Below, piece by piece: positions 19,421 to 61,193 of a stretch of DNA of 64,000 bases. The position numbers and the translations under genes are program-made. Below the pieces are notes generated by a model. It had not been told where the DNA came from. It was given only the letters and a program-made list of their open reading frames with translations, and searched no databases. This stretch comes from Girardia tigrina (lineage: Eukaryota), in assembly GCA_001938485.1 (NCBI GenBank), contig MQRK01222709.1, forward strand, positions 24,965 through 88,964. The letters are read 5' to 3'. Each line of letters begins with the position of its first letter. Position 1 is the first letter of the stretch.

Positions 19421-20510
19421 ACATGTATTATGTAGGCATATATATTAAACATATAAAACAAATTTTTGACAAAATTGTACAAATTTTGTATAAATATTAG
19501 AGTCCCGATGTAAGAGAAGCAAGATGTAAATCAGACGAAGATTGTATGAAAGGAAGAAATTTGATAACAGCATCTGGAATGTTTACCGGTAAATGTTTAA
19601 ACTATTCCTCCAAGTTTGGTTTGTGTGAAATCAGAGGCTGGTGCCCTACAGAAAATGACACATTACCATTAAAAAATGAACCTCTTTTTCCAATGGTAGA
19701 AAATTACACTGTTCTTATAAAAAACGACATTGAATTTCCAAAGTTTAAAGTTAAAAGGTATTTTTTTCTATAATATAAAAATTATTATAAATTATAAATT
19801 GCAGACGAAATGTGTTGGATTGGTCAGGAAAGAAGTTCCTCTATTCATGCAGGTACAAAGCTGAACACCAAGAAATGAAGTTCTGTCCCATTATAACTCT
19901 TGGAAGTATTTTCAAAGAAATAAAAGCACCCAAAAAAATGCTATCCGAGGTGAATAATTATAATTATGACCAAAAACAATACTTTCCTTAAAGGAGTAAT
20001 TCAAATTATTCCCCGTACAATTTGATAATTAATGTTACAGTCTACCAATGCGTAAAGAATAATTTATGAATGAAGTGGGAGTTTAACATCATTGTAATCA
20101 TTGTAATTATTATTGAAGCGTTTCGAATGATTCTTCAATATTTCTCTTTTTAAGAAGAATAATAAATAACGAAAATGTAATATTCATTATTTATTTGTCT
20201 GACAGAAAGACAAAAATTCATAAAAAATTACAATAATAAAATATTTCATTTTGTCCTTATAGTATTAACAAGCAAAAATCTTTAAATAAAATTAATCGCA
20301 ATATTTAACAAAGTAGTAATTATTTCCGTTCTTGAACTTTTAGAATGTAGAAAAATGACAATTTAATTGTAATGTATTGAGAAAATAAATGACTGAATTT
20401 ACATAAAATATTTGAAAATCAAAGTAATAAAAAATGTCAGAATACTATTTTCGAAAATTTATTTATATAATCAATTATAATGACTATTCACCATTTTCAG
20501 CCTATTTTTT

Positions 20511-29500: not shown

Positions 29501-32500
29501 CACTCGATTTAATACACATGTGTTTGAATTTGTCACCTGTAAAAGCTCCTCCATTGTCAACAAGGATTTCTATGGGAGCTCCATGCCGTATAAATAATTC
29601 ATCGAGAATTTTTATTACGTCGTCGGCTCCTTCAGTTTTTACTTCTCTCCAAATAGAAAATCGACTGGGCCCACAATCAATTACTGATAAATATACTCTA
29701 TTCTTGTAATAAGTATGATATGTAGCCAATCTTCACAACATTTTTCTACCAATAATGATCCCTTTGGTGTTTTTATAGGGCCGGGATCAACATTAATACA
29801 CCGTTGACAGTTTTGAACAACACTTTTCAATTTTCATACCTCCTCCTTACATTATTACATCCATGCCAATTATAACATCTACATCTTTTACTAACTCACT
29901 CATATCTAAACACTTTAATCTCAATAACACATTAGACTCAGACTCAATCTTTATCTCACACTCTCCAAGCACAGCTACTTCATTTCCATCAACTTCCTTA
30001 ACACACACATTAGACTCAATCATCTTCTATCTACCCAAGTCATATCTTACAATACTCACATCACTCCCACTATCAATAAGAGCATTAACCCACTTACTGT
30101 TCAACTTGACCATCAACCGCATAGGCACCTTTCTCCTCGTACAAGAATAGTCGGTGCCAACTATTGTTGGTTTAAGTTTAAATGATTCTTCTTCTTACAC
30201 TTGTATAATGTTCACCGGAGATTCATAATCACAAATTAACTGTTAGATTTATTAATTTTATTCCTCTCTGAATTTGCCTCTAATTTACTATGATTAACAT
30301 TCTTATTTAGCTTGTTTCGGTTAGCTGCTGTCGATTTAATAATTATTTTTTTCTTTTCATGGATTTTTACACATATCCCAATCAATGCCTGATTCATAAT
30401 TTATTAGATTTTTTAGATTTTTAAAATGTTTTCAACTTTAAAATATCAAAACAATTATTTCTTTTCTTAATTGTTATTTAATAATAAAATTATTTATTTT
30501 TAATTCGATAATATTTATCTCTCTGTAGATATTCTAATATCATTTATACATCGATCAGTTATAGTCAATATATAGTCAAACTACTTGGCTAGATAATTCA
30601 ATTTATAGTTATTAATAATAACTTATTATTTTTTGGGAAATCCTTCCTTGATTGTGTAGTCTTTATTAATCTGAGAATTAAATAGTCATTCAGTTACATA
30701 AATTCTTATAAAAAAGTCATGTTCTATTGAAATAAAGAGACAGACCACATATATAATATATTTGTCTAAAAAATGTGTTTCCTTGTTGGTCACGCTATGA
30801 TCGAAATGTGAAAATACGGGGGAATCACGTAAGCGAACCCACGCAAGGACATGATAAATCTGGATAGCCCTCATTGATACGGTTTTGTCGGTACAGCGCC
30901 TTTGCCGAAGAACGCTGCTAACCCGACGAAATCGAACGAAAGCCGTAAAGGTCGTTACATTTTTAAATCAATTCCGATTTTGAATAATGCCAATTCGAAT
31001 GTTTCCTACAAGAAATTTCGTGAGATTTTCTAAAAAAATACTAATAACATATTATTTCAATTGATAAATGACGATTTCTATCACTTATTTACCAATTTTA
31101 TTTATAAAAATCAATTTAGTATAAATTTACAAAATTTCGTTATCGTCTGAGTCACGGTCAAGCTCAAATTTTACTATGATCATATATTAATATATGTTGA
31201 TAAAATATGAAATGGTACAGGAATAGGGAGTACATCCGAATAAAGTTGAGGTAAATCTGCAGAACCCGCTTTGAGACGGTATCATCGTAAGGATCCAGGA
31301 GCCGACTTAATTTACAGACTGTTAAATCAACGCAGAATTCGAAACAATAAATGATAAATTATAATAATTACGATTTAAAAATTAAAACAGAAACTTTTAA
31401 AGACGAAAATTCAGTTCTACCGTCGTATATGTCGGTTCTTTTTCTAGTATTTATAGATGTTTATTATTATACTTTCAAATACAAATTATACTTTCTAGAA
31501 AATGTATATGAAAAGTGGCACAAAAATCTTTTCTTATTTTAGATATGGTCATTATTATCGTATAAATGACACTCTTCATCGGGATCTCGTCAAAGCTTAT
31601 GGGATTCGGTTTTTAGTTTTTGTTACCGGAAAAGCTGGAAAATTCAGTGTAATACCTCTAACAATGAATTTAGGATCAGGATTAGCTTTACTGGGCCTGG
31701 TTAGTTTATTTAATTATTTGTATTAATTACATTTGTAAAGATAACTCACACACGGTTAAAATGGTTAAAACTTTTACTATAAGCATAACTCAGATCATCC
31801 TTGAGATTAGGGAATGTAATACCGGTAATACCGAAACCGGTTAACCGCTTAACCGTCGCTATAATTCGATACCGAAATATGGTATTTAAAAAAATTATTC
31901 CAATTTACAATGATATTTTTTAAAACTTTTATTAAAAAATAAAAAAAATAGTTTTTAATTTCATCATTTAAATATTTTTTGTATAAGAAATTAGAGCAAC
32001 CTTTAGCTTATAATGAAGAAAATGAAATTTAGAAAAACTAAACTAAACTAAACGAAACACAATCGTTGACACCACCATAGGTGCAATATGGAGCCCGAAT
32101 CCCATATGAGTTAGTACGTATAAATCACCGGCATACTTTATCGAAATTCAGGATCAACTCTTACTTGCATATACGCTTCTCGAAGGTCGAGCATTGCACC
32201 AGTTCAGTCTCCATAATCGAATTTTCTCGATACATACATCACTAGCGCCGGTATATACATCGATATATCGGTACATCTCCCTAAAATCAAAGATTGGTCT
32301 CATCTGTTTCTTATTTAGCTGCTCCCTAGCAAAGGTTGGTACTAGACCTAGATGGTTTCCCATACTCTTATCATACGGTAGTATATATCCCACTTCTTTC
32401 CAATCTTTCATTTTCTTGTCAAACTCCATCTTAGATTTCTTCTCCATTCTGTAATTTGACACAGCCTTCTTAAGAAATGGGACCTCATTGCCTTTCAAAT

Positions 32501-36546: not shown

Positions 36547-39500
36547 CTAGATATCAAAATAATTTAGTTAAAAAAGAATTAAAATTAAATAATGAACAAA
36601 TGAATATTTAAATTAAAAAATAATCGAAATTCTTTCATTTGTAAATGAACAATAGAGTCACAATTATTATGACTTCCGAGTATAATCATGCTTAAGTGAC
36701 TCATTGAGAGTCGAATTCTTCAATTGATTAGAATGTCTTCTAAGTAAAGTCGAGACTCGAAATGGCTCGCTATGATTAGTTGGCCAATCAGAACGAGTCT
36801 CGTGAGAGACAGTGACTTCTTGAAATCACTTTTTATTGTGATTTAGGTTTCTGATTTTTCCTCTTTTTTGTTTTTTTATTGATAACCAAATTTATGAATT
36901 TTGATGTCGAATACCATTGCGTGAAAATTTGAGAGCTTATTGGGATATTTTAAGATTGATGATACTAAGAAAAAATTATCAAAGTTAAATTTGTTTCAAG
37001 TCAAAAGTAAAATTTAAAAAATTTAAAAGTGAAATTTAAATTGGAATCAAAATATAATTGTAAAACAAGTAAATCGACTTAAATAAAAAATTTTATTTTT
37101 TTTATTTTATTTTTAAATTTTTAAATTTATTTTTATAATTTTATTTTATTTATAAATTTTATTTTGGAAAACGTAATTATTAATGGAAATATAATTTTAT
37201 TTTTTATGTAGAAAAGGGGTAATTTAAAAGTTGTTAAATTAAACGAAATTTCGATTTTAAATTCTATTTTCAAAATATTATTTTATTAAATCCAAAGTAA
37301 TTTTTAAAACTATTATGAAAACGAAATGAAAAATGCTATTGTATAGAATTGGGAAATCTAATTGAGAAACAGGTATTGAATAAAGGTACAATAAAATTGA
37401 AATTTAATAAAAGACGCAATAAAATCTTTGTGACAAAATTTTAATTAACTTTATAATTTTTATTAAAAAAGTAAAGAATTTTAATTCGTAAAAAAAATAC
37501 AATAACCATATTTATATTTACATCTATTCTTATTTAAAATGGTTTGTGTAAAAAGAAAGTGCAAAAGTTCCTCGGAAATATTTGTTTAAAAAACTCAAAT
37601 TGTGGTAGAAATAAAGTTTTGCATTAATGACAATGTCTTTTGATCAAAAACCCGATACGTACATTAACTAAGTAATCAATCGTTCTACTTTTCTCAGGAC
37701 TGTTCTCATCTCAATAATCTCACGTCTTAGTAAAAAGAGAGGAAATATTAAGTAGCTGATTTTCAGAATTTTATAAATAATTCTAATAACCTGTCAGGCT
37801 TAAGTTTCTTAAAATCTTATAACTTACTGATGTTTTTTAAATCTTCGTTACTTATGCTTTTTTTTCAAAATGTTCAAAAAGATAATTTTAATTTACATTA
37901 CATGTTTTCTTTTTTATTGTTAATATTTTTACATTTTTGTCCCCTGTTGACATTTGGGAAAGTTTATCACTCTAATTTCAACAGCTCGACGTTCGCACTC
38001 GTGTACAAATAAAAGACTTCCAAGATTTTAGCTTAAACTTATTTTTACAAAACAATAAAACCTAAAATCATTTGTTTGAAAAACCAATACTAAAATATAT
38101 AAATTATTTAATAATATTTACACTAATCATATTTTTAGTAATGATCGCAAAATAAAGAAAAATAAATAATTCGATCATGTTGATCCTCTTTTGTAATTTA
38201 GGCATCCGTTCTATGCGATATCATTGTGCTTCATTTATTGGGATCAAAAGATGTTTACCAGAAAGCGAAATTCGAAACTGTTGGAGAAGAAGACAAAATA
38301 ACAAGCGAAGTAAATTAAATATATATTCAAATAAATTAGATCTTGTCTAAAAATAAGGTTATCAAGTACCAATCATTATATATCAACAATTATGAGTTTT
38401 AAATAAGTGAATCTCAGATAGGACAGGAAATAATTAGGCCTACATCGTGACAAATCTCATCAATCTCAACGATAAGTATGATAAAATCAGTCCGGTTTTG
38501 TAAAACTTCCTCCACTTAATCGACCAGTCAAAGCCTAAATATATTGCAAATATTTTACGTCTCTTTAGTTTCCAGTGAATTTAACACGTTCCCTTAAAAG
38601 AATACTTCAATTATTGTTCATTAAAATATGTAATAATTCAAATCTACATATAATCCACTCATGTATAAATATTTAGAACTGTAAGCCGCAAAATTAAACG
38701 ACTCTCATAAAAGGAACATGTAACAGTTATAGCTATTTTCACAACCAGGAAATGTTGACCTAACATTCAAGACAAATTCCTCAGATATTTCTAAAACATA
38801 TTACTAAATCTGATCTAATTATTTCCTCTTTTTAGAAATTTTAACAAATAGAAAATTGTACATTTCCAATTGGGAAATTGTAATATTATTAAAATTAATG
38901 ATCATTTGGAATTATTTTAAAATATTTTAAATCGGTATCTCTTATTTTAAAATTTAAAACGAAATCTTTAAAGCATTAGTAATTTAGAGTGGATTATCAC
39001 ATAAGTTCATAATATCGCTACCTTGACTTCTTTGGACATTAAAGTCGATGAAGCTCGAGTAAAAGACGAAAAAGCTATCGGAAAGATAGCTGTCACACCA
39101 AAATCTTTGAAGAACAGATATTTTTTAAAAGGTTTAAAATATTTGAAATCCACCCGAAATAATTTTGTCCGACGATTTTGTAAAATATTGGATACTTTGG
39201 TTCCCAATTTTACGTCTAAGGTCAAACAGTAATCAAAGAAATGGACACATAAAAGGGAAGGTACTTGAGTTTTCTGAGAATCTACTCATGAAGTTTATCT
39301 TGTAAACCGATTGGCTCAGAAACTGTTGTTATGCAGTAATTATGACAGTAATTGTGTAAATATTTACGCCACTTTTGTCTGAATCGGTGTCCGATAAGTC
39401 AGGAAAGTGGCTGTTGTCAGCTTTTTATCCATCAGCCTTTAGAATTGACGTAAAACAGTCCATAACCTTAAAATTGTTATATTCAATTTAGTGACTCTGT

Positions 39501-42500
39501 TTGGAAACAAATATAAAAAAATTAAACGCCTTATTAAACACAAGTAGACGTATAATTGGATGAGCATATTCTCAGAAAACTACGGTAATAAATATTACGC
39601 TAACGGAAGACCATAAATTTTTAATAAACTAAAGAGTGAGTAAAACGACATCAAACAGCTAAAGAAAACGTTAAATATGATAAAAGATTTAATTACTTCT
39701 GGTTGAAAAAACTTAATAATTGATCAAAATTTAGCAAGATTAATAAAAAATAATGGGTTTAAAAATACAGATAAAAATATTAAAAATAAGATTTAAAACT
39801 AAAATTATCTTGAGAAACTTAGGTAACTGCAGTGATCTTCAATTAATTTCACAACCAATCAATTTAATTGAAAAGTGTCTTGAAGCGCGAATTTAATTAA
39901 TGTATTTATGTTAAAAAATTGTAACTAAAGCGGTGCGGGACAACTCGCCGAAAGCTCAATTTAGTTATGTAACTTTACAAAGGAAAAAAAGTCTAAATTT
40001 TAGAGTAAAACAATGGACAACTCGCCGAAAGTTAATTTTGGTTAAGTGTTATTATTAAAAAATGTAAATTTGTTGAGAGCGATTTCTTTTTAATTTGTAA
40101 ATGAAAAGATGTAAATTGGTAACTCTGCACAAATTTTTGAAATTAAAAAAATAAAGTTATTGATTGAAATTTGTCTTTGTACTGAAATTTAAATAAAAAC
40201 ATGAAAATCAACGCCAGCTCAGTTTAAAGGGAGCAAAAAATTATTCCAGATAATCCGGCGGTGAGAACTTTGGTATCTCCGTTTAGGTTCATAACTTTGG
40301 TCTTATTGATATTGATCTTTAGTCCTAAATCTACAAATGAGTCATTCAGTAGAATAAGGTTTCTGATAAGATTGTTCCAGTCGGTGTCTATCAGACAGAG
40401 ATCGTCCGCGTAAGCCAGTCTGTTGATCTCATCCCGCTTCAGCTCCCAGGAGATGAAAAACCGTTCAAATGTACCAAATGCAGCAAAGGTTACAAAACGA
40501 AAGGACGGTTCACTAGGCATCTGCGTAAAGATCATCGAATAGAAGCGAGGGAGAATATCAATGAACATCCGACAGAATCATCAGAGCAATCCAACAGAAG
40601 AAGCGACAATCCAGCCAGAGACGAAGAACCCACACTTATCCAAACGACCAATTTTCAGCCAGCAATAGTCACCCAGACTATTTCAACGGTGGTGGAGCAA
40701 ACGACTTATCCCGAAGATACACATTTGACTTTTAAGATCGCAGATCCAAATGCGAGGGGAAAGCTCAAATGTCCCTTTCGCGGCTGTACCAAGTCCACCA
40801 ATACAGCCAAAGGGTTGCTCAATCATGGTACCACAATTCATGATTGGTCGTTTGCAACAGGGAAGCCTAAAAATTTCGGAGACTGAAGCACTCCGTCCCC
40901 GTAGGAGGCCTACCGGAGGGCAGCTAGCACTCTTTAGTTTGGGTGGACCCTCTAAAGAGCCTAGTGGCTCAATACCATTCGAAAGAGATGGGAGGCCCAC
41001 ATTCCAGATAATAGGAAAAGCAAATAGGAAAGAAATATCTAAGTTCAACAGTAATTGAATCTAGAAAAACGCATCTTCAGTTGCAAAAGTTTCCCATCGA
41101 AATGAATTCAACTAAACCTTAATTTCACAACGAGCTCAAAAAGGATCAAACAGGTCAGACTAATCAACAAAAATGGAAAAGTGAAACGGCCCTTGTCAAG
41201 CCCATGTCTATAATTTTATAACACAGCATTAAAAATTACGAGTTCATGCTGAAAATGGGGGAAAGATATTTGATTATTAAATAAGAAAAGATGGCTTTAC
41301 ATGATATATTCCACAACTAGAGCTTTGAATAAATATGTTTTACTGATTTCTGTGCTAGTTTGGTTCCTTCGGAAAATAATCTTTAAAAACCCAAAAAGAA
41401 CCTAGGAGGACATATTTTTTTTAGTTGTTTTGAGTGATTTGATGTGAATATTTAACACTTCTTATTAAAAGATATCATAAATAAATTTTTTGATTTTTAT
41501 TCTAACCAGTCTTGGATAGTGATAAAATTTATATAAACCTTTAGGGCATCCTTTTGTCTTAATTATTCTGTATTGGTTTTGTAAGTGAAAACGAATTTCA
41601 ATGACCCCCAACATTTTTAGTGATGTTATGAAACCATTATTTAAATTTATCTGGCAAAACATCTAAAAAATATCAATTCTTCTGAAGAAGAATTGAATAT
41701 TAAGCCCAGTAAATGAAAAAATATATTATTTCGGTAAAACTTTGATCTTTTACTGCAAAAATTAATGAAATTAATTAATTTTTACATCAAAATTTTTCAT
41801 TAATAAAATATTGAATCTATTTTTTGCGAAATAAATTATTTGGATTTTGAAATAATATTCGTAAGAAATTAGAAATTAGGCGAAATCCCAACGACCGAAA
41901 TAGATGACATTCTATACGAATTTTATATATTATCAAAGAATTATAATGTCTTTAAATAAGTCCTATTAATAAAAATATTATCCCCCAAAAGATACATTAT
42001 TTCAATGTAAAAATTGTAATCTTTAATGAAATAATTCTAATATTTCTTGTGACGGTCAATTAATAATGATAATAATTAAATTTTTAATTACTAATCCGAT
42101 TTAATAATTAAAATTAACATGAAATTTTCATACATTAATTAAAACATTTTTTTCAGTTTATTTCTTTCGAAAGTCATGAAAATATTTTTAATGTTCTTCT
42201 TTCATTATTTTAGGAGACGTAAACGATTTTTGGTAAAAGAAATTTATAAAAGGAAAAAAATAATTTTTTTCTCCGGAATTTTCGTATTTATGGGAAAACA
42301 AAATTAATAATCTAATATTATTTGATTAAAATTTGATTGATGCCTTAATTAATTATGATTATAAATATTATTTCATTTTTTAATTAACATTAGTCATTTT
42401 TTTTGTTATTTTACTATGATATATTTTTTTCAGGTTTTTTTTGTCACTTGAATGATTCATTTATTTTCAGAAATTATTTTCTAAATTACATTATTTTTTA

Positions 42501-43916: not shown

Positions 43917-46599
43917 TATGATATGTTGTTTACGACATGAAACGTCATCTTATTCAGTCATAATCCAGCAGCTGCGTAGTATTGATTATACCTGATATGA
44001 ACGTTGTAGCTAGAACAGGTCGTACATATTACCTGAGACAACAAAAGAGAACAACAATAACCTTTGCTGCCATCTTTACTGAATGATACAAGACCTATGA
44101 TGATTCTGACAAATACAAAAAGAACCAAGGCTTGTGGTTGGAAGATGGAACATTAAAGAAATATCAAAATTATTTCTGTCAAATGTACACATTGTAGCAT
44201 GGAATAAATCATGTGGTTGTTTAACGGCGCTTATAATACAAAAGACTGAAAGTTTTCTATGATGCAGGTCCCGTTGTAAAAAAAATACTGACCCTTAATG
44301 ATTTTTAAATTTTATTTTATTGATTACTTAATACTGAAGTAAAATTCATTCATAAAAGTTTTGTACCTGCATCGAAGAGGTTATTGTTGACAGATATATG
44401 TTTTAATCAATATGTTTCTGAAGAATCTGGAAGGGTTCACGAAATAGACGTGATACTGACTGACCAAGGTTGTCTAATGAAATCAAATTATTAAAATTAT
44501 TTAAAATCATTTTTCCTGAAATGATTAAGTATATTACAAAAAAACATTTTCTTCAACAGACTGGATGTCTTGTTTGCGTTGATTCCTTTCAACTTAATTC
44601 TATTCTTTACTTGTTCTTCAAATTTCTAAGTCTTTAATCGTTGTGCGTGATTTTCACTCAAACTTTTTATAACAGTTTTTTTACTTATTTAAAATTGCTT
44701 ACGTTAAGTAAGATTCGTAACCCTTTTACAAATATAAGAAGAACCTTTTACAAGAAAAAATTTCCATTTTTCGTTGAAAAGGCCCAATGTACGATGTGTG
44801 ATGAATTTTAAATTATTGGATTCAAGCTCATCATATTGGTTAATATCCCTCAAATAAATTGGCAATATCCAGAATTAAATCAAAATTCATTTACATAATT
44901 TAATTTTGTGGAAGAACTGATATTAAAAGGCAGATAAGGTAAATAAAGTAAATCTAGTTTAACCGGTGCTGAATAAATTAGAATTTGTTTGGAACACTTA
45001 CCTAATATTTAACGTAAGACCATCTGGTAATATGTAAAGAATGTCTTTTTGTAGATATATTTTAATTATACAATAAACAAGTGACGAAGCTGAAAAGTAA
45101 AATCTATAATTTATTACCAAATTAAAAGAGAAGAAATAGTTAGAAAAACGCAAAGTTATCTTTAAGTTTTTTAAATGAGAAATTATGTAGAAAGTATTAT
45201 TGATGGTGAATGGTTATAAAAGAAATTAAGAATAACTGAACTTGCTAAGGGTATCTTTGGTATAATCTTAGGGCAAAATTGGACTTATGCCTTTGGATAT
45301 TACAGATGCATTTTTATACAAGTTTATATTTGCTGTTTTACTGTTATATACGTATTTTCTATTTAATAATTATTAAGTATACTAGGACTATTTTAATTAT
45401 AAAAACAAAAGAAACAGACAAATTAAAAATGAAAAACTCGCAAAAATTGACAAAGCATAAGAGATACAGAATAGTTATTACAATGTTTAATTGTGATACA
45501 ATTACTAAAGGTTAATTGTACGTTTGTTAATTGATGTTAATATTTTAATTTATCAGCTTCTTCATTATATTTTGGTACGATACTGGAGACACGTTTGAGT
45601 ACTATGACGTACTTCTTTTACTTCTGTAATTCCTGTTTGAGAATTCACTAGTATTCATTTATGACTTATCCTATCTTTTTGAAAGAATTTTTTAAAGAAT
45701 TGCATAACCCTTCACTGAATCTTGTCGCTTTTCGTGTTTTTCCAGCAGTGGTATTCAATGTTTCAGACTTTTATCGATAACTTTGGTTCTCGCTTTCAAT
45801 GTATGTGACGAAAAAATATTTCAAGACGTTAAGAAATCGTTTATCATTAGAATATTTTCATGAGAATTGATTAAATATATTGAAAAAAAACATTCAGAGC
45901 AAAAATTTATGTCATTAACTTTATAAGTCTAAAATACTTTCGTACGCTGATCTCCTGTACACTTTTTAAGTTTGTCAAGGAAATTTAATTGAATAAAACT
46001 TTGGTTTCAAAATTTGTTGTTCGAAATATTCAGGTTAACTATTTGTTTTATATTGCTTTTAATGATGATTTTCCTAGCTTGTTCATATTGGGAATTTAAA
46101 AAAAAACGAAGATCTAGAATGTAATTTTAGTTTGATTTGTACATGTGATATGCTGGCAACCGGACCCAGCTATGGCGGCCAGCATCCCTTAAACGTAAGG
46201 GGAATTGTTGCTCGGACAGATCGGTAGATCGACTTGACAGTATCGGTGCACCGGTAAGGGTGGAAAAAAACTTTTTTTATAAAAAAACAAACACGTTTTT
46301 ATAGACTTAAAAAATATGTTTAAAAACGGTTATATTTTTTTTAAAAAGTTAATTTTTGTTTTAAATATTTTAATTTTAGACAAGCAAATTGAATACATTG
46401 AGGTTCTTGTACTATTATTTTAATTAATTTTTAAATGATGTTTTTAGATTTTTTATTACTCGCAACAAATCTTTATCTGTTTTGCCAAGTTTTGTAGTAC
46501 AATCAGATAATAAAGAGAAACAAACTACTACGTACAAGTTAAAAATTGCAATAAGTGCCTGAGAGCGTCCTGCATCACTAGACTTAAAAAACATGTGCA

Positions 46600-47520
46600 C
46601 AATTGCCATTTGAGTATCGACCTTTCAATTGACTTTGTAGTAAATAATGAAAACAACGTCATACAGTCATTGAACTCATTATCTCAGGTACAATTATCTT
46701 CAGAATTCAGTCAAGAAGGCGCTTCTACTATATTGTCTCAAAGCTCCATGAAATTAAAGGTATCACCTTTTCATACATCATCTAGTAATAAAGTGATTAC
46801 AAAATCTAATCTTTCGTCGTCGTGAATTCTCAAATTTGTTGATTTAATGACAGAACGGCGAATTCGAAATATCTTACTTGATGCAAACGACAACAGCTCT
46901 TCCTTTTGAAACGGTCTTCAGTTAATGGAGTCTTTCTATGAACCTTTTATCTTTGCATTATCAAAATTTGAGTCAGATGAACCTTCTTAAGCACAAATTT
47001 ATCATGAACTTGAACTATTACAAAAACATTTGCGTCAAAAATGTAATGAGAGAAATCACAATGATTTTCAACAGTGTTCAAGAAAAATTTGAAGTGTCGA
47101 AGTTTCTTAACTAATGAAATAATGCTCTTGGATACACTAAGTTTTGCAATTTATCAATAAAATAATCGTTTCTTATTGATGTCATTCACATTTCATTCTA
47201 GCTCCTGTTTTGAATCATAGTCAAAGAGACGATAATCTCGTAGATCATGAGTTCATAATTCTCAGAAAAATCCTGTAGGAAAAGATGCCAAAAGATTTTA
47301 ATGTAATAAGGTCGCAAATGCTGACATACAAAGCACTGACAGGTATATTTTTTACGCCTGAAATTGGGAAGATGCTACATTTATTGATTCTAAGACAAGT
47401 TGGAAATTCTTTGGCGAAGATTAAACCTACAACGTGCATACTTCGAGTCGAAACAGACTCACGGATGAACGTGTGGAAAAATTGACTTACGTTTATTTTA
47501 ACCATCGCATGATGTATTAA
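46600..47520 (+). mobile_element. hAT transposase relic
   Basis: C-terminal SRNRLTDERVEKLTYVYFN at ~47445-47505; GC-rich subterminal blocks at 46150-46260 and 47685-47775. Confidence 0.55.
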
Positions 47521-47983: not shown

Positions 47984-48891
47984 TATCTTAACCCTTCATA
48001 GATCTTTGTTACCTGTTATTATAACATTTAGATTCATATTTTACCACATTATGTAGTGTACATATTATTTTTATAAACTTTTTATTTATTTTATTTTATC
48101 TGTGGAAACATCACATAAAACTTTTGTGGCTAATTCCTAACCTAATTTATTAATTATATTTCAAATTCCATTGTCTCATTTTGCTTTTATTTTTCTGCCA
48201 ATTCAACAGTTATATTTTGCATAATAATTATTTTATGATATCTTGCAAATTTAATATATTATTTATTATCGATATTTAAGTTTTGGGACGTTTGTTAATA
48301 ATTTAAAAACGTGTGTTTTTAAATTTATAATTTCAAAATTTAGCTAATCTAAAGGCGGAAAAGATGGAGTATTTATATAATTTGATAAAAAGAGACGATC
48401 TTTATAAATAAAACTATCTAATAATATTCTATAATTCGTGTCTGACAGCAATAAAAACGGAATCAAATAAAATTAGAACAGTAGTCCATGTCCATAGGAC
48501 GTGCACCGAATTACCATTAAATACTCGAGCCAACGGGGTTTGAAGGATTTGAAATTCCTACATGGCAGTAGCAGACCTTTCTGGTGAGACATAAAATTCA
48601 TAAAAACATGTTATATCTGAAACAATGACATCAAAATAATTAAAAAAATAATTCTTTTTCATATTTGTGCATAATTTTACTTATTTTTTTATTATTTAGC
48701 TAAATATTATCGCTTATTTATATCGTGTTGCATGAGATATTTAAACAATGTGTCTATTTTTATATTGAATTATAAGTGGAATGATAAAATGTATTATGCG
48801 TTTTTTATGGCTTGTATTTTAATGGTCAGTATTTCCTTTAAACGGTCATTATAAAAAATACTTGAGCAAAAAAATTGTAAGTAAATGTTGG

Positions 48892-49473
48892 GATCGAGAA
48901 ATTTCCCAATCGACACCAGGCCAATTCATTAAGGGCGCACTGAGTCTGATGGAAAATTTCTCGGGATCTGAAATAAAATAAAATGATTATTAAATAAATA
49001 TAATATTAATTAATTAAAACTAACCTTAATTGATTTTGGACTTTGATCTGAAATAAAAAATATGATTATTAAAATTAATTGAAAAAAAACTTACTTAATT
49101 GATCTGACCTTTGGAATCTGAAATTATAAAAACAATGATTATTTATTTAGTAATAGAAAAAAACTTACTTGATCGATCTGATCTTTGATCCTTGTTGATC
49201 TGAAATGAAAAATATGATTATGTTTTTTTGATTGTAAAACTTACTTAATTGATTTGGACTTTGTTGTCGACAGATAACGGCAGGAGCTTATAGTGCCTGC
49301 CGAAACTGTTGACACAAAGTCCGGTGATCTCGAAATTTATGTGAAAATTTCGAAAACACGAATTATGTTTTCTTGATTTTAAAACTTACTTAATTGATTT
49401 GAACTTTGTTGTCGACAGATAACGGTAGGAGCTTATAGTGCCTGCCGAAACTGTTGACACAAAGTCCGGTGAT
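48892..49473 (-). ncRNA. Candidate spliced non-coding transcript: micro-exon array (exons 49390-49473, 49245-49328, 49169-49199, 49095-49117, 49025-49047, <=48967)
   Basis: Five introns of 61, 45, 51, 47 and 57 nt with GTAAGT/GTTAGT donors, TAAT branch-like motif and TTTCAG (or TTTCGAG) acceptors; no convincing ORF. Confidence 0.55.
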
Positions 49474-49510
49474 CTCGAAATTTATGTGAAAATTTGGAAA
49501 ACACGAATTA
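49245..49510. repeat. 145-bp tandem duplication, each unit holding a 67-nt hairpin (49256-49322, 49401-49467)
   Basis: GGACTTTGT-T-GTCGACAG-ATAA-CGGCAGG...CCTGCCG-AAA-CTGTTGAC-ACAAAGTCC. Confidence 0.9.
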
Positions 49511-49686
49511 CTATAAATTCGTTTGAATCTGTTATTTGTTAAAAAAGGTTTTTGTCTAATTGTTGATTACAAATTAATAAATTTTTCAATCTTCAGTTTT
49601 TGTGAGTATTTTAATTTTATTTTTTTTAGAGGTTGATGGAGTATAGATATAAATTGGACATATGCTAAAATATATTGCTGGGAGGC

Positions 49687-49948
49687 GATCAGTTGATAGT
49701 TACTGGCAGGTGCTCATAGTGTCTGCCATGATTGTTGACGATCTGGCAGTGAATAAGAAAAAGATCTTTAAAGAGAAATTAAGACAGCTGATCAGTTGAT
49801 AGTGACCGGCAGGTGCTCATAGTGCCTGCAGTGAGTGTTAACGACCATGCAGGGAATATGAAAAGATCTTGAAAGGAAATTGAAGACAGATGATCAGTTG
49901 ATAGTTACCGGCGGGTGCTCATAGAACCTGCCGAGTATATTGATGATC
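49687..49948. repeat. Three ~103-bp tandem units, each holding a 57-nt hairpin (49687-49743, 49790-49846, 49892-49948)
   Basis: GATCAGTTGATAGT.AC.GGC.GGTGCTCATAG...CTGC...GA(T/C)C; shares the core of the 145-bp units. Confidence 0.9.
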
Positions 49949-50672
49949 TGGTAGTCGAAAGAAATTGTTCTCTATAGAACATCTTAAATGTCACTGTCGA
50001 TGAGATAGTCTAATAATCAAACCTCCATCAACCTCAACCTTTTTTTGTTGTCATTGTTAAACCTTTAATATTAATGTTGGATAATTGATGAACATTTATG
50101 TTTTTAAGTTTATTTATATTCTTTTAAAATATTTAAAGATTATTCAGTAGAAATATAAGAAATCATCAAAATATAAAGCAACATGATATCAATAGAGATT
50201 TGTTCCTCTAGACAGGAGATGGATGAATATTTACAAAAAAAAGTTTACGAAGAACCCGGAAGGTATTTGATTTTGTTCACTGGTAAATCATTGGGCCAGA
50301 TGAACCTAATCGGGTACGATACGAACCATTTGCATGTATTAGAAGAGGAAAGATAGATGATGTTCGTATCAAAATAATGTGTTGGGTTTTATAATAAAAA
50401 AGAAATAATACATAAAAAAGATAATAAAAGCCTTACATAAACAACATGATCAGTATTGTAGGTATTTAGTCAGTATTTTAATTACGTTCCCAGTATGTTC
50501 AATCTACGATCAGCAAAATGGCCACTATTTTAGATATTTCATCAGTATTTTAATTAAATTAACGTTATATTTATTTAATGATCATTATTATATTTAAGAA
50601 GTTTATTTTGTACGATTAATAATTTTAAATCGAAAGCTATTTCACACATTAAAACAATATTTTTTAACATTT

Positions 50673-51990
50673 TGTAGTTTCTAAATAAAAATACAATAAA
50701 GCTAACACAATATTTATTTAAAAAAACTGTTTTCCGTTGTTTAATAATTTAAACAAATGAATTTTTTAATCCATTTCTTACACGCCCCCTGCCCTTAAGG
50801 CACACAGACAAACACCGTCTGAACAAGGGGAAATTTTCTTTTAATCTTCACTCCGAGATTCGGTGCATACGAAATCTTTTAATCTTGGTGGTGTCAAAAC
50901 TGTTCACTAAGGTCGCCCCCGTCGGTAGGCGCTTGCTGATTATCTTCTCTACGAGGTTCTGTTTCTGTATCTTTTCCTCACTCGATTCTCGCCGCTCACG
51001 TCATATCTTCGCCTTAATCGTCAACAATTTCTGTTTGAATTTGTTCTGTTGAGAGCACCCAACGCACGTAACTGATGTAATATGGCCTGATATTGACTTT
51101 GACTTACTGTTTTTGAGGCGCTCCCGATACTGTCGCTCAAGTCAACTTCGTCATGCAATTTGCTAATGGGGCTGGTTTAATTCGTCTTTCATTATTAACT
51201 GACTTTGTCTTTGGGGTGCTCTCGAGAAATCTTTCAAGAGAAGCAGTCTTCTTTTCTGTGTAAATACTGTGGACGCCTATATTATTCCGTCCGTATTTGG
51301 TGTTGCATTGTATCATGCAACCATTTTTCCAATCAATCTTCCACTTCGAGTCACCATCTTTTTAATCATACGGTGTCCACTCTCCACAATGCCTTTTCCA
51401 CTTGACCTGTTCACGCATCTAAAACAAGCGTCCACTCCTGATTGATCCAGCAGTCTTTTGATCCAGTTTCTTCTGAAGGTTCTGGAATTATTTAGAAAAA
51501 CTTCCGGTGGTCCGAACTCGTGGAATACACTTGCTAATGCTCAACAGATTTTCTCTTCATTCTTTGACTCGATTTGGCGCCAAATCATGAACCGCACCGG
51601 ACCACAATCCACCATTATTAGGAACTTTTTTCCTTCTACATATGTCGCGTCTACTGCCAGTCTTTTCCATGTTCTTTTGGAACTCAGTTCTTCTTTATCC
51701 CACTTGATTAGTGCAGGATCAATTGATGCGCACTGGATGCATCCTTTCACCACCGATTTTATCTAATCTCCCGAGACCCTATTCGCCCCTCACATCTTCC
51801 TCGCTAGGAACATTGTACGCTTCGTCCTGAAATGGTTGAATTCGTGTAGTTTTTAAACCATCAACTCCTTCGATTTGCGCCTCAGTTATGAATGCCGCAG
51901 CCACCGATGTTTCCTTTAATGTTGTTAACCAATGGCTTGGCACCACTGTTAGCGCATCTACTCTGTTTTCCTCTGATCGTGAAAAGAAAT
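50673..51990 (-). mobile_element. Ty3/Gypsy 3' fragment: integrase, PPT (50783-50798) and 110-bp LTR (50673-50782)
   Basis: CIQCASIDPA, WKRLAVDATY, MVDCGPVRF, EFGPPEVF; minus strand AAGGGCAGGGGGCG|TGTAAG...GAAACTACA. Confidence 0.85.
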
Positions 51991-55306: not shown

Positions 55307-55563
55307 ATGTAACTTAATTTATGTTATTGGTTGCGAATTCAAGACATGACTCGACACAGGCTTTCCTCAATCCATTAATTTCGATCGACCACAAAATTTC
55401 GGAATTCTTACTTATCTTTATCCTCATTTTTGAAGAAAATAGTTAAACTTAATTAATAAGTTAAAGTTAAATTGAGCTTTTTGTTGTTGGTGAGTATACA
55501 GGTTTTATTACATCGATTGCGAACCAAGGGGGTCGTCGACCCAAAAGCAATGCTATATATATA

Positions 55564-56127
55564 TATTATTGAGTCTTCTGAACGCAAGTTTAGTATTTCG
55601 AAAATATAATTTGATTAAAGCTTTTTTATATAATTATTGGACATGTTTCGATGTTTACATACATCATCATCAGCAATTTTCGGATATTTAGTAAATGAAT
55701 ATTGAATTGTTTGAATAATACAATTTTTTACAATTTTAATAAATATAATTTACTTTAAAAGGTGACGAAAAAATTAAACATTATTTATGAAAATATTATT
55801 TGGTAATAATGGCAAAAAATATTTTAATTAAAAATTTTAAGTATTGATATAACCTTACTTTACCCATTCTGAATGTTAATTGATGGGTTGTAGTGTCTTA
55901 TTAGTAGAGATTCACAAAACTGTCGTTCGTAATTTGAATCAAAACCCTTTTGTAAAACAGAAAACTCATCTTTTGAAATGGATGAGGTTCTATCCTTACA
56001 ACATAACCAATGATCAAGAACCTTACTCGATCGACTCATTTGCGAGTGCTCGCTAATCCGGGTTTTGAGATGACGATTTGTCTCTCCGATGTACGAATTT
56101 TGACACCCGTGACAATTAAATTTAGTA
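55564..56127 (-). mobile_element. Penelope-like element 3' end: GIY-YIG C-terminus plus pLTR with hammerhead
   Basis: FNCHGCQNSYIGETNRHLKTRISEH...ESLLIRHYNPSINIQ; terminus abuts (TA)n. Confidence 0.9.
55636..55677 (-). ncRNA. Minimal type I hammerhead ribozyme
   Basis: AUUG-CUGAUGA-U-GAUGU(AUGUAA)ACAUC-GAAA-CAU-GUC^-CAAU: intact core, 4-bp stem I, 5-bp stem II, palindromic stem III ACAUGU. Confidence 0.85.
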
Positions 56128-56369: not shown

Positions 56370-56750
56370 TTACTTAATAAATAATGCTTCAGTGATCATC
56401 CGCTCGAAATTTGTGTCAAAATTTTTACTCAAAACTTTGAATTCTTTTTCATATATATTATAGAGAATGGAGCTGTTTCTACTCATTTGAGTGTGTTCTG
56501 CAATTCTGTACGGAGATGACGACGTGTTTCTCCGATGTACAAGGATATACACTTGTGACATTGAAACTGATCAGGCCGACATTTAAACTGATAAACTATA
56601 TTAGCTTGTACACTCAAAGGAGTTTGTGATTTATTGCTAAAATATCTCGATAAATTATTTGTAGTAAATATTACTCTAAGCTTAAAACATGTAGGTATTC
56701 TTTTAATAAAAAATGTTTTAAAATGTTTTAGAAACAAATACAATTGATGA
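56370..56750 (-). mobile_element. Second Penelope GIY-YIG fragment (different subfamily)
   Basis: KSQTPLSVQANIVYQFKC..C...YIGETRRHLRT(fs)RIAEH..ERMITEALFIK. Confidence 0.85.
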
Positions 56751-56820
56751 TACCCAAAATAAAATTAGACTAATGTTGAAATAACCTGAAATACTCTGAA
56801 GGATCAAAAGACGGGTCTTT

Positions 56821-57231: not shown

Positions 57232-58195
57232 ATTTAAGACAGCCATTCCCAATTAAACTTATTTTGAAATTTTGTTAAATTGAGTCAGGCTATAGCTGTT
57301 TGCAATCATATTTGTCCAGCGTCATTTGCAATTATATTTATCGAAATTTTGATTATTTAAACTTTTTTGGACTATACATAATAATTATTATGAGAATAAA
57401 TAAAAAGACAAGAGTAAAGCACACCAAATATATATATATATATATATATATTTTGTCACAACTCTTCTATTTTCGAATTTTCGCTAATGTGCGAGCTCAG
57501 CTAAACAACGAGCAATTTTCATCACTTTTTTGCAGATCATTTTCGTCATTACAATAATATAAAATATACATCGATAAGAGAAAAATTATAAAATGGACCC
57601 AGCACGAACTCCAAATGCCCGAGTCTTTAAGAACTTGCCGCCACTGCCACTCTACCGCTACATCCGTCCGGTCTTCGGACAACCTAGGGATCGGGCGGAA
57701 TAGGGTTGGTTACCTTTTCTGTAACTGAAAAAATTATTTCTTAGACAAATTAAATTAAAATAAATGACCTGAGCAAATCATAACATGAATAATTAAAAAA
57801 TTGAAATTTACCTGACTAATTGTACTTTTCTGTATGTTTTCCAATAAATTTTATTAAAAATATAAATCATTCAGACATTCCTTTCTGAACCTGAAAAAGA
57901 TATAATTCGGTACATCGAATAAAAGCGTCCTATACGTGGAGAATTATTCTTCCTTATATTTGTGAACAAGATGATTTATTTTGGCTAAAGTTTTTATAGG
58001 TCGTATCTGATTAACAGAAATATGTACCTGTTTCAGGAGAAATAGGCCGGTTATAAAAACAAATTTAAAAATAAATGAAACGGAAAGTTTAATACATCTT
58101 TTAAAACAAAAAATTGTAGCAGTTGTATTTATTACATTAACTATTTGTAATGTGTTTGAATATATTTATTTTAAATTATTGATTATATGCAAATA

Positions 58196-60492: not shown

Positions 60493-60562
60493 NNNNNNNN
60501 NNNNNNNNNNNNNNNNNNNNNNNNNNNNNNNNNNNNNNNNNNATATATATATATATATATAT

Positions 60563-60920
60563 ATAATATTGAGTCTTGTGAACGTAAGTTTAGTATTTTG
60601 AAAATATAATTTGATTAAAGCTTTTTTTATACAACTATTGGACATGTTTCGATGTTTATATACATCATCATCAGCAATTTTCTATTGGATTGTTTGAATA
60701 ATACAATAACTTTGAAATAACCTTACTTTGTCCATTCTGAATGTTAATTGATGGGTTGTAGTGTCTTATTAGTAGGGATTCACAAAACTGTCGTTCGTAA
60801 TGTGAATCAAAACCATTTTGTAGAACAGAAAACTCATCTTTTGAAATGGATTAGGTTCTATCCTTACAACATAACCAATGATCAAGAACCTTACTCGATC
60901 GACTCATTTGCGAGCACTCG
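60563..60920 (-). mobile_element. Penelope-like element 3' end (near-identical to the 55564 copy, internally deleted)
   Basis: Shared GIY-YIG tail and pLTR; terminus abuts (TA)n. Confidence 0.88.
60637..60678 (-). ncRNA. Minimal type I hammerhead ribozyme (second intact copy)
   Basis: AUUG-CUGAUGA-U-GAUGU(AUAUAA)ACAUC-GAAA-CAU-GUC^-CAAU; differs from the 55636 copy only in loop II. Confidence 0.85.
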
Positions 60921-61193
60921 CAAATTTGCATCAAAACATTCATCTCATCCAACTCAGAAATATATTTCAAGGATGGCATCCAAAAGTTGCCAAGCAACTG
61001 GAAAAAGGTGATAGATACTTACGGAGATTATTTCAATGAATAGTCTTTTACATTTTTAAAATATTTCAATAAATTTGATTAAAAAGGTCAAGAACTTTTG
61101 AATGAACCTAAAAAAATTATAATCGAATTATAAAGAATAAAAACCACATACTGGATAATTTAATTATCACGTGTTTTATATTATAATAATTAC

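What the first reader, a model, noticed from the sequence alone, without database searches (positions are those of the whole stretch)
48892..49948. Six long hairpins, mostly placed directly after a 3' splice-site-like AG|ATC: candidate small-RNA precursor cluster
Seen: a five-member hairpin family (49256-49322, 49401-49467, 49687-49743, 49790-49846, 49892-49948) with the core GG(C/T)(A/G)GG.GCT(C/T)ATAG..(C/T)CTGC, plus an unrelated ~70-nt hairpin (arms 48895-48908 / 48950-48963). On the minus strand five of the six begin within a few nt of a pyrimidine-rich ...AG|ATC; the sixth has a degenerate site. In the 103-bp units one arm (GATCAGTTGATAGT.AC.GGC.GGTGCT) is nearly invariant while the other drifts. 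Established: polycistronic pri-miRNAs show tandem ~60-70 nt hairpins with this arm asymmetry. Inference: a lineage-specific miRNA or hairpin-siRNA cluster, or RNA elements coupled to cis- or trans-splicing. I do not recognise a known miRNA, and the ~26-29 bp stems are slightly short for canonical Drosha substrates.
Basis: partly seen in the sequence, partly recalled or inferred. Interest (0 to 1): 0.8.

Follow-up and report, generated by a model that had tools for sequence, protein, structure and literature searches.

The report
Tandem RNA-type hairpin cluster, function unproven
A 1.1-kb intergenic stretch of an AT-rich, flatworm-like genome holds a real cluster of unusually stable hairpins; they look shaped by RNA-level selection on the plus strand and could be a young small-RNA precursor locus, but they do not fit canonical microRNA geometry and no expression or cross-species evidence could be obtained.

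Summary
All six hairpins are at the stated coordinates and rank among the roughly 18 most stable 80-nt folds of 12,686 in the window. Five form one family (A1, A2, B1-B3); a covariance model finds no other member in the 64 kb. They sit in two adjacent tandem arrays (145-bp and 103-bp units) that share only the hairpin.

Pairing is kept by wobble and compensatory changes on the plus strand (89% of cells paired against 73% on minus). The B hairpins fold 8-14 kcal/mol better on plus. AG|ATC is the complement of a GATCT motif at the stem base.

The A array on the minus strand does look like five canonical mini-introns (45-61 nt) between exon-like pieces. This conflict between strands is unresolved.

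Stems are 23-28 bp without a consistent lower stem, and the block shared by A and B is apical, so canonical pri-miRNA geometry is not met. Rfam, collection scans and literature searches found no relatives.

Best reading: a young, lineage-specific plus-strand hairpin-RNA (miRNA-like) locus, confidence 0.4. Main rival: a palindromic, MITE-like tandem repeat.

The parts
48891..48968 (.). H0: unrelated ~78-nt hairpin at the left end of the A array, ending in GATCT
   Evidence: -29.6 kcal/mol on minus (z -4.3) and -22.9 on plus. Not matched by the family covariance model.
48965..49510 (.). A array: tandem units of about 70-82 bp; the last two are enlarged to 145 bp by the A hairpin plus a mini-hairpin
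49254..49324 (+). Hairpin A1 (family member)
   Evidence: -41.6 (+) against -36.0 (-). The most stable 80-nt fold in the window. CM score 80 bits.
49399..49469 (+). Hairpin A2 (family member; 97% copy of the A1 unit)
49324..49359 (.). Mini-hairpin (15-nt arms) just 3' of A1 on +; on the minus strand it spans the weak GAG acceptor. A second, slightly degraded copy lies at 49469-49504.
   Evidence: I9.
48968..49389 (-). Five intron-like segments on the minus strand (49329-49389, 49200-49244, 49118-49168, 49048-49094, 48968-49024; 61, 45, 51, 47 and 57 nt). They separate exon-like pieces of 84, 84, 31, 23 and 23 nt.
   Evidence: a GT(A/T)AGTTTT donor, a conserved TAATCAT about 20 nt before a TTTCAG (or TTTCGAG) acceptor. 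These columns and the exon 3' end are the conserved part of the unit. Real P2X introns in the window are 33-47 nt.
49629..49648 (.). Left arm of the inverted repeat flanking the B array (13 nt perfect, 20 nt at 85%)
   Evidence: I4. It forms the closing helix of the 421-nt + strand fold.
49687..49743 (+). Hairpin B1: 26 pairs, 8 of them G:U, on +
   Evidence: -24.6 (+) against -10.2 (-). Strand difference ranks 2nd of 4,234 windows.
49790..49846 (+). Hairpin B2 (4 mismatches in the stem)
49892..49948 (+). Hairpin B3 (4 mismatches in the stem)
50016..50035 (.). Right arm of the inverted repeat flanking the B array
   Evidence: (I4).

Best explanation
The locus is two adjacent short tandem arrays whose repeat units each carry an RNA-type hairpin. 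The hairpin is the only part shared between the arrays, and its pairing has been kept on the + strand by G:U wobble and compensatory substitutions. The most likely functional molecule is therefore a + sense transcript carrying a string of hairpins: a young, lineage-specific polycistronic hairpin-RNA precursor. It would probably feed Dicer-type small-RNA production (miRNA-like), by a non-canonical or still inefficient route because a proper lower stem is lacking. New copies arise by tandem duplication, some copies decay (B2 and B3 each have 4 mismatches), and some units have lost the palindrome by deletion. The AG|ATC seen on the minus strand is the complement of the GATCT motif at the stem base, not a processing signal for the B hairpins.

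Shown: the hairpins, the family, the covariation, the strand bias, and the absence of known homologues.
Inferred: transcription, its strand, and any processing into small RNAs.
For: - The hairpins are extreme outliers in stability.
- On the gap-free 57-column alignment, 89.2% of cells are paired on +. Seven pairs change on both sides. The covariation score is 0.369 against 0.225 for shuffles (0 of 500 reach it). Slid registers give 29-53% paired.
- The mirrored minus-strand structure pairs only 73.1%.
- G:U occurs at about 11 pair positions on +, against 2 A.C positions.
- MFE(+) minus MFE(-) for B1 and B2 is -13.5 and -13.0 kcal/mol, ranks 2 and 3 of 4,234 windows (sd 3.5).
- The 421-nt B domain folds at z = -7.7 on + and -3.0 on -.
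- A and B share the hairpin but have no detectable spacer similarity.
- The B 5' arm plus loop is nearly invariant while the 3' arm changes yet keeps pairing.
- Three unrelated hairpin types sit in one 1.1-kb stretch. This fits new hairpins arising within an existing transcript (PMC3763532, title and abstract as listed).
Against: - There are no expression data.
- Main stems are 23-28 bp, and only B1 reaches about 33 bp, through a wobble-rich 7-bp helix beyond a 6-nt bulge.
- MFE loops are tiny.
- The block conserved between A and B is the apical stem-loop rather than a mature arm or seed.
- B2 and B3 each carry 4 stem mismatches, and the recent A1/A2 pair shows no excess constraint in the stem.
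- Within the B array, changes made after duplication are only weakly biased towards pairing: about 9 preserve it and 8 break it (my count).
- There is no Rfam match at E up to 10 and no further copy in the window.
- The region is TE-rich and intergenic, and the B array is flanked by an inverted repeat, as in a MITE.
- The A array carries strong minus-strand splice-like signals.
Confidence: 0.4

Rival explanations
1. Selfish or neutral DNA: a palindromic tandem repeat, possibly a MITE-like non-autonomous element with internal tandem repeats. The hairpins would be DNA dyad symmetries produced by local inverted duplication or template switching and homogenised arm to arm. They would have no RNA function.
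For: - The setting is intergenic and TE-rich: a hAT relic at 46.5-47.5 kb, a retroelement relic at 50.1-53.2 kb, and Penelope, mariner and pogo copies nearby.
- The B array is bracketed by a 13-nt perfect inverted repeat, about 0.005 expected by chance in this 2 kb (own estimate).
- Three unrelated palindromes (H0, the family, the mini-hairpin) sit in one array.
- Hairpin-less units keep only the left outer arm, as expected from palindrome deletion.
- B2, B3 and A2 are accumulating stem defects.
Against: - The strand asymmetry of wobble pairs (about 11 to 2) and of folding energy is not expected for a DNA palindrome, whose two strands are equivalent.
- No target-site duplication is visible at the inverted repeat.
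- There are no dispersed copies in the other 63 kb.
- There is no similarity to any TE terminus in the window or in the fetched pogo contigs.
Confidence: 0.3
2. A minus-strand spliced transcript: a tandemly duplicated exon-intron module, non-coding or encoding a short low-complexity peptide. A2, A1 and H0 would be exonic hairpins starting at the 3' splice sites. The hairpins would modulate exon choice or splicing, or would simply be carried along.
For: - Five consecutive units have a GT(A/T)AGTTTT donor, a conserved TAATCAT about 20 nt upstream of TTTCAG, and 45-61-nt spacing. The exon 3' end and the signals are the conserved columns.
- Genuine P2X introns in the same window are 33-47 nt with similar signals.
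- H0 folds better on minus.
- The A region is equally structured on both strands, z about -10.5.
- The mini-hairpin spans the weak acceptor of the A exons.
Against: - The B hairpins are poor on minus, -10 to -15 kcal/mol with z from +0.2 to -2.7.
- The B hairpins have no good donor; GTAACT or GTCACT lie inside the stem.
- The A-exon acceptor is GAG.
- Exon lengths of 23, 23 and 31 nt are not multiples of three.
- Substitutions among B1-B3 show no coding signature: about 5 synonymous to 10 non-synonymous in the better frame (own count).
- No upstream first exon or ORF was found.
- The 45-aa + strand ORF over B1 has no relative in the protein collection.
Confidence: 0.15
3. A known catalytic or processing RNA in tandem: a hammerhead-type satellite or retrozyme as in schistosome Sm-alpha, or a spliced-leader RNA gene array.
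For: The host looks like a flatworm, a group in which hammerhead-bearing repeats and SL trans-splicing exist (own knowledge). The A hairpin has a CAGAUAA...GAAAC arrangement around the apical helix that faintly recalls a hammerhead core.
Against: - No ribozyme or SL family matches, even at E up to 10.
- There is no helix I and no CUGANGA box.
- Each minus-strand unit has an upstream acceptor, and no Sm-site-like element was noticed on reading the units (not scanned). Units of 70-80 bp are too short for SL RNA genes.
Confidence: 0.03

Closest known systems
Young, species-specific polycistronic miRNA clusters formed by tandem duplication or by new hairpins arising in an existing transcript (PMC3763532)
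   Same: Several 57-71-nt hairpins spaced 100-150 nt apart in one orientation. One arm is invariant among recent duplicates while the other keeps only pairing. Wobble-rich stems. Unrelated hairpins sit side by side.
   Different: Stems are 23-28 bp without a consistent ~11-bp lower stem. The conserved block between subfamilies is apical. There are no small-RNA reads and no known seed or Rfam family.
MITE-like elements with internal tandem repeats, and MITE-derived miRNA hairpins (own knowledge, e.g. Made1 / mir-548; bivalve repeat-bearing MITE-like elements)
   Same: The B array (3 x 103 bp) is bracketed by a 13-20-nt inverted repeat, for a total of about 407 bp. The units are palindromic, the neighbourhood is TE-rich, and the flanks are AT-rich.
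   Different: No target-site duplication and no other copy in 64 kb. There is no similarity to transposon termini in hand. The strand-biased wobble pairing is not expected for a DNA element.
Mirtrons
   Same: The hairpins lie next to splice-site-like motifs, and the genome uses very short introns (33-61 nt), the size class of mirtrons.
   Different: On the minus strand the hairpins are the exon-like segments, not the introns. On the plus strand the hairpin ends lack GU and AG.
Flatworm micro-exon genes (own knowledge)
   Same: A tandem series of very short exon-like pieces (23-31 nt) with canonical splice signals in a flatworm-like genome.
   Different: The exon lengths are not multiples of three. 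No signal-peptide exon was found and there is no coding signature.

Membership tests
Canonical animal miRNA precursor (Drosha/Dicer substrate; MirGeneDB-type criteria) | Imperfect hairpin with at least 16 paired positions in a ~22-nt duplex | tested here: met
   There are 26-28 pairs in A1, A2 and B1, and 19-22 in B2 and B3.
Canonical animal miRNA precursor (Drosha/Dicer substrate; MirGeneDB-type criteria) | About 35-bp stem: ~22-bp upper stem plus ~11-bp lower stem flanked by single strands | tested here: not met
   Main stems are 23-28 bp. Only B1 extends to about 33 bp, through a wobble-rich 7-bp helix beyond a 6-nt bulge. B2 and B3 do not.
Canonical animal miRNA precursor (Drosha/Dicer substrate; MirGeneDB-type criteria) | Mature arm or seed is the most conserved part among paralogues | tested here: inconclusive
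   Among B1-B3 the 5' arm is nearly invariant. Between A and B the conserved block is the apical stem-loop, and the arms differ by compensated changes.
Canonical animal miRNA precursor (Drosha/Dicer substrate; MirGeneDB-type criteria) | Discrete 5p and 3p reads with 2-nt 3' overhangs | not testable with these tools
   No small-RNA data are available.
Canonical animal miRNA precursor (Drosha/Dicer substrate; MirGeneDB-type criteria) | Match to a described miRNA family | tested here: not met
   No Rfam 15 miRNA family matched at E up to 10. k-mers from all arms are absent from 8.4 million full texts except for chance hits. miRBase and MirGeneDB themselves could not be searched.
Mirtron | Hairpin ends coincide with the 5' GU and 3' AG of one short intron on the hairpin's own strand | tested here: not met
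   On the minus strand the hairpins lie between an acceptor and the next donor, so they are exon-like. On the plus strand the ends have no GT...AG.
MITE / TIR element with internal tandem repeats | Terminal inverted repeats | tested here: met
   49629-49648 against 50016-50035: 13 nt perfect and 20 nt at 85%.
MITE / TIR element with internal tandem repeats | Target-site duplication | tested here: not met
   The flanks read ...TTTTTTTTA and AACCTTTTT...; no direct duplication is seen.
MITE / TIR element with internal tandem repeats | Multiple dispersed copies | tested here: inconclusive
   None in the other 63 kb. Only chance hits in metagenome contigs, and none in prokaryote-genome or viral contigs. 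The host genome could not be searched.
Hammerhead or other self-cleaving ribozyme repeats | Conserved catalytic core and three-helix junction | tested here: not met
   No ribozyme family matched at E up to 10. The CUGANGA box and helix I are absent.
Spliced-leader RNA gene array | Short leader exon plus donor, an Sm site, and no upstream acceptor | tested here: not met
   Every unit has an upstream TTTCAG acceptor, and units are 70-82 bp. There is no Rfam SL match. The Sm site was not scanned for.
Micro-exon gene | Runs of symmetric micro-exons (multiples of 3 nt) between a signal-peptide exon and a terminal exon | tested here: not met
   Exon-like pieces are 23, 23 and 31 nt. No upstream ORF with a donor was found.

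The most novel reading that the evidence does not exclude
The two strand signals are both real. A minus-strand spliced non-coding transcript is built from a tandem array of palindromic mini-exons, each starting at a 3' splice site. The same palindromes are read from the plus strand as hairpin small-RNA precursors. This would be a sense/antisense locus in which splicing on one strand and hairpin processing on the other share the same repeat unit. Alternatively, exon-sized hairpins are released in a splicing-coupled, Drosha-independent way distinct from mirtrons.
Probability: 0.07. Interest if true: 0.75.

Novelty: new member of a known kind. Interest (0 to 1): 0.35.

Why it matters
If the plus-strand hairpins yield small RNAs, this would be a snapshot of a small-RNA cluster being born. 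It would show tandem duplication, wobble-mediated stem maintenance, decay of some copies and palindrome loss in others, all in a flatworm-like lineage where lineage-specific miRNA gain is of interest. It would also be a test case for hairpins that lack a Drosha-type lower stem. If it is only a palindromic repeat, it is an ordinary piece of repeat-rich intergenic DNA. In that case the strand-biased wobble pattern would be a caution against reading RNA selection into few, related copies.

Tried and rejected
- Rfam, whole window at gathering score and the locus at E up to 10: only noise. ARAGORN found no tRNA.
- Degenerate core pattern in JGI metagenome contigs: 10 hits, all chance matches in GC-rich or unrelated contexts. 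None was pursued and none was recognised as human.
- A longer pattern in prokaryote genomes and in viral contigs: 0 hits.
- Exact-product look-ups of four window ORFs, two of them at the locus: not on record.
- Word search with the 45-aa ORF over B1: no candidate. This was an attempt to detect other genomic copies through spurious ORF calls.
- Literature k-mer searches in U and T spelling for all arms: nothing relevant. The supplement of a flatworm miRNA paper is not held.
- Similarity of hairpin arms to TE termini in the window and in the pogo contigs L001 and L012-L018: only 11-12-nt chance words.
- Homology between the B spacer and the A-array units: not significant.
- Hammerhead, SL-RNA, Helitron-end, snoRNA and rolling-circle-origin readings were considered and dropped for missing core motifs.
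- Coding readings of the exon-like pieces were worked out by hand only and show no coding signature.
- Joined models: neither a joined micro-exon model nor a joined P2X model was searched.
- Species identification failed. The best named P2X relatives are flatworms at 49-55% identity for the exon searched, up to 64% on other exons in the tblastn map.

Full report
**Context**

The window is about 28% G+C and is crowded with transposon relics:
- a pogo/Tigger transposase at 7095-8108 (-);
- mariner pieces at 14.6-15.5, 25.6-26.1 and 58.4-59.4 kb;
- a reverse-transcriptase fragment at 40.2 kb;
- a GIY-YIG (Penelope-type) ORF at 55.9-56.2 kb;
- integrase-like relics at 29.5 and 51.3-51.8 kb.

The one clear host gene is a P2X receptor on the + strand. 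Its exons lie at 140-259, 485-660, 694-765, 19501-19758, 19803-19943, 26627-26779, 31538-31669 and 38202-38318. The last exon ends in a stop, and AATAAA follows 13 nt later. A search with the single exon 19501-19770 gave named relatives that are mostly flatworm P2X receptors (Schistosoma, Heterobilharzia, Macrostomum, cestodes) at 49-55% identity. I therefore take the host to be an unannotated AT-rich flatworm. This is an inference, and the species is unknown.

Exons were handled one by one by reference. Real introns of this gene can be as short as 33-47 nt.

The finding lies 10.5 kb downstream of the P2X stop. It sits between a hAT-like relic (46.5-47.5 kb, read by eye) and a degenerate retroelement (50.1-53.2 kb, minus). 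It is therefore intergenic as far as the window shows.

**The observation**

All six hairpins are real. In a scan of 12,686 80-nt windows on both strands (mean -9.4, sd 4.8 kcal/mol), A1 is the most stable fold of the whole window at -43.3. A2, H0 and B1-B3 all fall within the best ~18 loci. The family core occurs five times against zero expected. A covariance model built from the five copies finds no further member in the 64 kb, and it does not recognise H0.

The copies sit in two adjacent tandem arrays:
- 2 x 145 bp at 96-97% identity (A1, A2);
- 2.4 x 103 bp at 85% identity (B1-B3).

The A units are the enlarged end of a longer array of 70-82-bp units running from 48965. H0 sits at the other end of that array. 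Each A unit also has a 15-nt-arm mini-hairpin. The B array is bracketed by an inverted repeat at 49629-49648 and 50016-50035, with 13 nt perfect.

**Which strand**

The five family members align without gaps over 57 columns.

On the + strand:
- 89.2% of cells form standard pairs.
- Seven pairs show changes on both sides.
- The covariation score is 0.369 against 0.225 for shuffles, with 0 of 500 shuffles reaching it.
- Sliding the partner by 1-3 columns drops pairing to 29-53%.

The mirrored structure on the minus strand pairs only 73.1%. The difference is wobble. G:U occurs at about 11 pair positions on +, against about 2 A.C positions that would be G:U on minus (one-sided binomial about 0.01, my count).

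Unconstrained folding agrees. B1, B2 and B3 give -24.6, -23.5 and -22.4 kcal/mol on + against -10.2, -10.7 and -14.6 on -. Across 4,234 60-nt windows the strand difference has sd 3.5, and B1 and B2 rank 2nd and 3rd. The 421-nt B domain, closed by the flanking inverted repeat, folds at z = -7.7 on + and -3.0 on -. The A region is equally structured on both strands, and H0 is better on minus.

A DNA palindrome treats both strands alike. The bias therefore points to pairing of a + sense RNA, or less plausibly to an extreme strand-specific mutation bias.

**What the AG|ATC is**

They are the reverse complement of GATCT. This motif closes the B and H0 stems, because GATC is self-complementary. It lies a few nucleotides beyond the A stems, and it also ends every hairpin-less unit. 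GATC occurs 18 times in 1,060 nt against 2.3 per kb elsewhere.

For the B copies the favoured RNA strand is the opposite one. No good donor follows the site; only GTAACT or GTCACT lie inside the stem. A link to splicing is therefore unlikely for them.

**The unresolved counter-signal**

On the minus strand of 48968-49389 there are five intron-like segments of 61, 45, 51, 47 and 57 nt. Their features are:
- a GT(A/T)AGTTTT donor;
- a conserved TAATCAT about 20 nt before the acceptor;
- a TTTCAG acceptor (TTTCGAG for the A-exon acceptor at 49328/49329).

They separate exon-like pieces of 84, 84, 31, 23 and 23 nt. These signals and the exon 3' end are exactly the conserved columns of the repeat unit, while the interior varies with indels. 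This matches the short-intron habit of the genome. It is hard to dismiss as chance, although tandem copies are not independent.

In this reading A2, A1 and H0 are exonic hairpins. Worked out by hand, one frame stays open through the five pieces, but it encodes only low-complexity sequence. The piece lengths are not multiples of three. Substitutions among B1-B3 show no coding signature. The joined sequence was not sent to any search.

Hairpin-less units retain the left outer arm of the A stem. They therefore look like units that lost the palindrome by deletion (inference).

**Tests against known kinds**

- Rfam gives nothing at gathering score, and only noise at E up to 10.
- Canonical pri-miRNA geometry is not met. 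Main stems are 23-28 bp, and only B1 reaches about 33 bp through a weak lower helix.
- Mirtron geometry is not met on either strand.
- The block conserved between A and B is the apical stem and loop. The arms differ by compensated changes. Among B1-B3, however, the 5' arm plus loop is nearly invariant while the 3' arm drifts.
- The MITE reading has the inverted repeat. It lacks a target-site duplication, dispersed copies, and any similarity to transposon ends in hand.
- Hammerhead and spliced-leader readings fail on core motifs.
- Scans of metagenome, prokaryote-genome and viral contigs, ORF-based look-ups and full-text k-mer searches found no relative. None of these collections holds the host genome, so absence there says little.

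**Verdict**

The best-supported reading (0.4) is a young, lineage-specific + strand hairpin-RNA locus. It would probably be a miRNA-like or other Dicer-substrate precursor cluster that grows by tandem duplication and is partly decaying.

The main rival (0.3) is a palindromic, MITE-like tandem repeat without RNA function. A minus-strand spliced transcript with exonic hairpins (0.15) remains possible for the A array.

It is corrected in strand, not met in canonical geometry, and untested in expression. Strand-specific small-RNA and RNA-seq mapping, plus a genome-wide search with the hairpin model, would settle it.

Noticed in passing
window 140-38318 (+): P2X purinoceptor gene spread over 38 kb in at least 8 exons. 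Introns range from 33 nt (661-693) and 44 nt (19759-19802) to about 18.7 kb, and the long ones are filled with transposon relics. The closest named relatives are flatworm P2X receptors at 49-64% per exon.
   Followed up: partly
window 7095-8108 (-), N runs at 8111-8160, 8478-8539 and 8872-8897: pogo/Tigger transposase ORF cut by masked or gap stretches. Intact 487-aa copies, 96% identical, occur on short contigs of several metagenome and SRA assemblies (L001, L012-L018). The host or a carrier of this transposon is therefore present in environmental or host-associated samples.
   Followed up: partly
window 55554-56057 and 60554-60925: Two copies (84-95% identical) of a repeat that includes the GIY-YIG (Penelope-type) ORF region. 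A second GIY-YIG-like ORF lies at 56486-56764 (-).
   Followed up: no
window 5991-6070: A perfect 20-bp stem with a 20-nt loop (-33 kcal/mol), about 0.6-1 kb beyond the C-terminal ORF fragments (6502-7091) of the pogo element. It may be a transposon terminal or subterminal structure.
   Followed up: no
window 12041-12120, 40891-40970, 57651-57730: Other very stable GC-rich local folds (-30 to -37 kcal/mol), unrelated to the hairpin family. 57661 shows a strong + strand bias (-11.6 kcal/mol).
   Followed up: no
window 29487-29732 (-) and 51316-51753 (-): Two degenerate integrase-like relics of one old retroelement family (36-46% amino-acid identity by tblastx). Pfam did not recognise the short pieces.
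   Followed up: partly
window 46514-47510 (+): The reading frames look like the C-terminal part of a hAT-type transposase (dimerisation-domain-like motif), broken by stops. This was judged by eye only.
   Followed up: no
window 48608-48639 and 50040-50071: A 32-nt inverted repeat, 75% complementary, with a 16-of-17 core. It brackets the whole hairpin locus (1.46 kb). By my estimate this is compatible with chance in AT-rich DNA, and no target-site duplication is seen.
   Followed up: partly
window 48891-49950: GATC is 7-fold enriched (18 in 1,060 nt), including one GATCGATC at 49171. G exceeds C on the + strand (207 against 133).
   Followed up: yes
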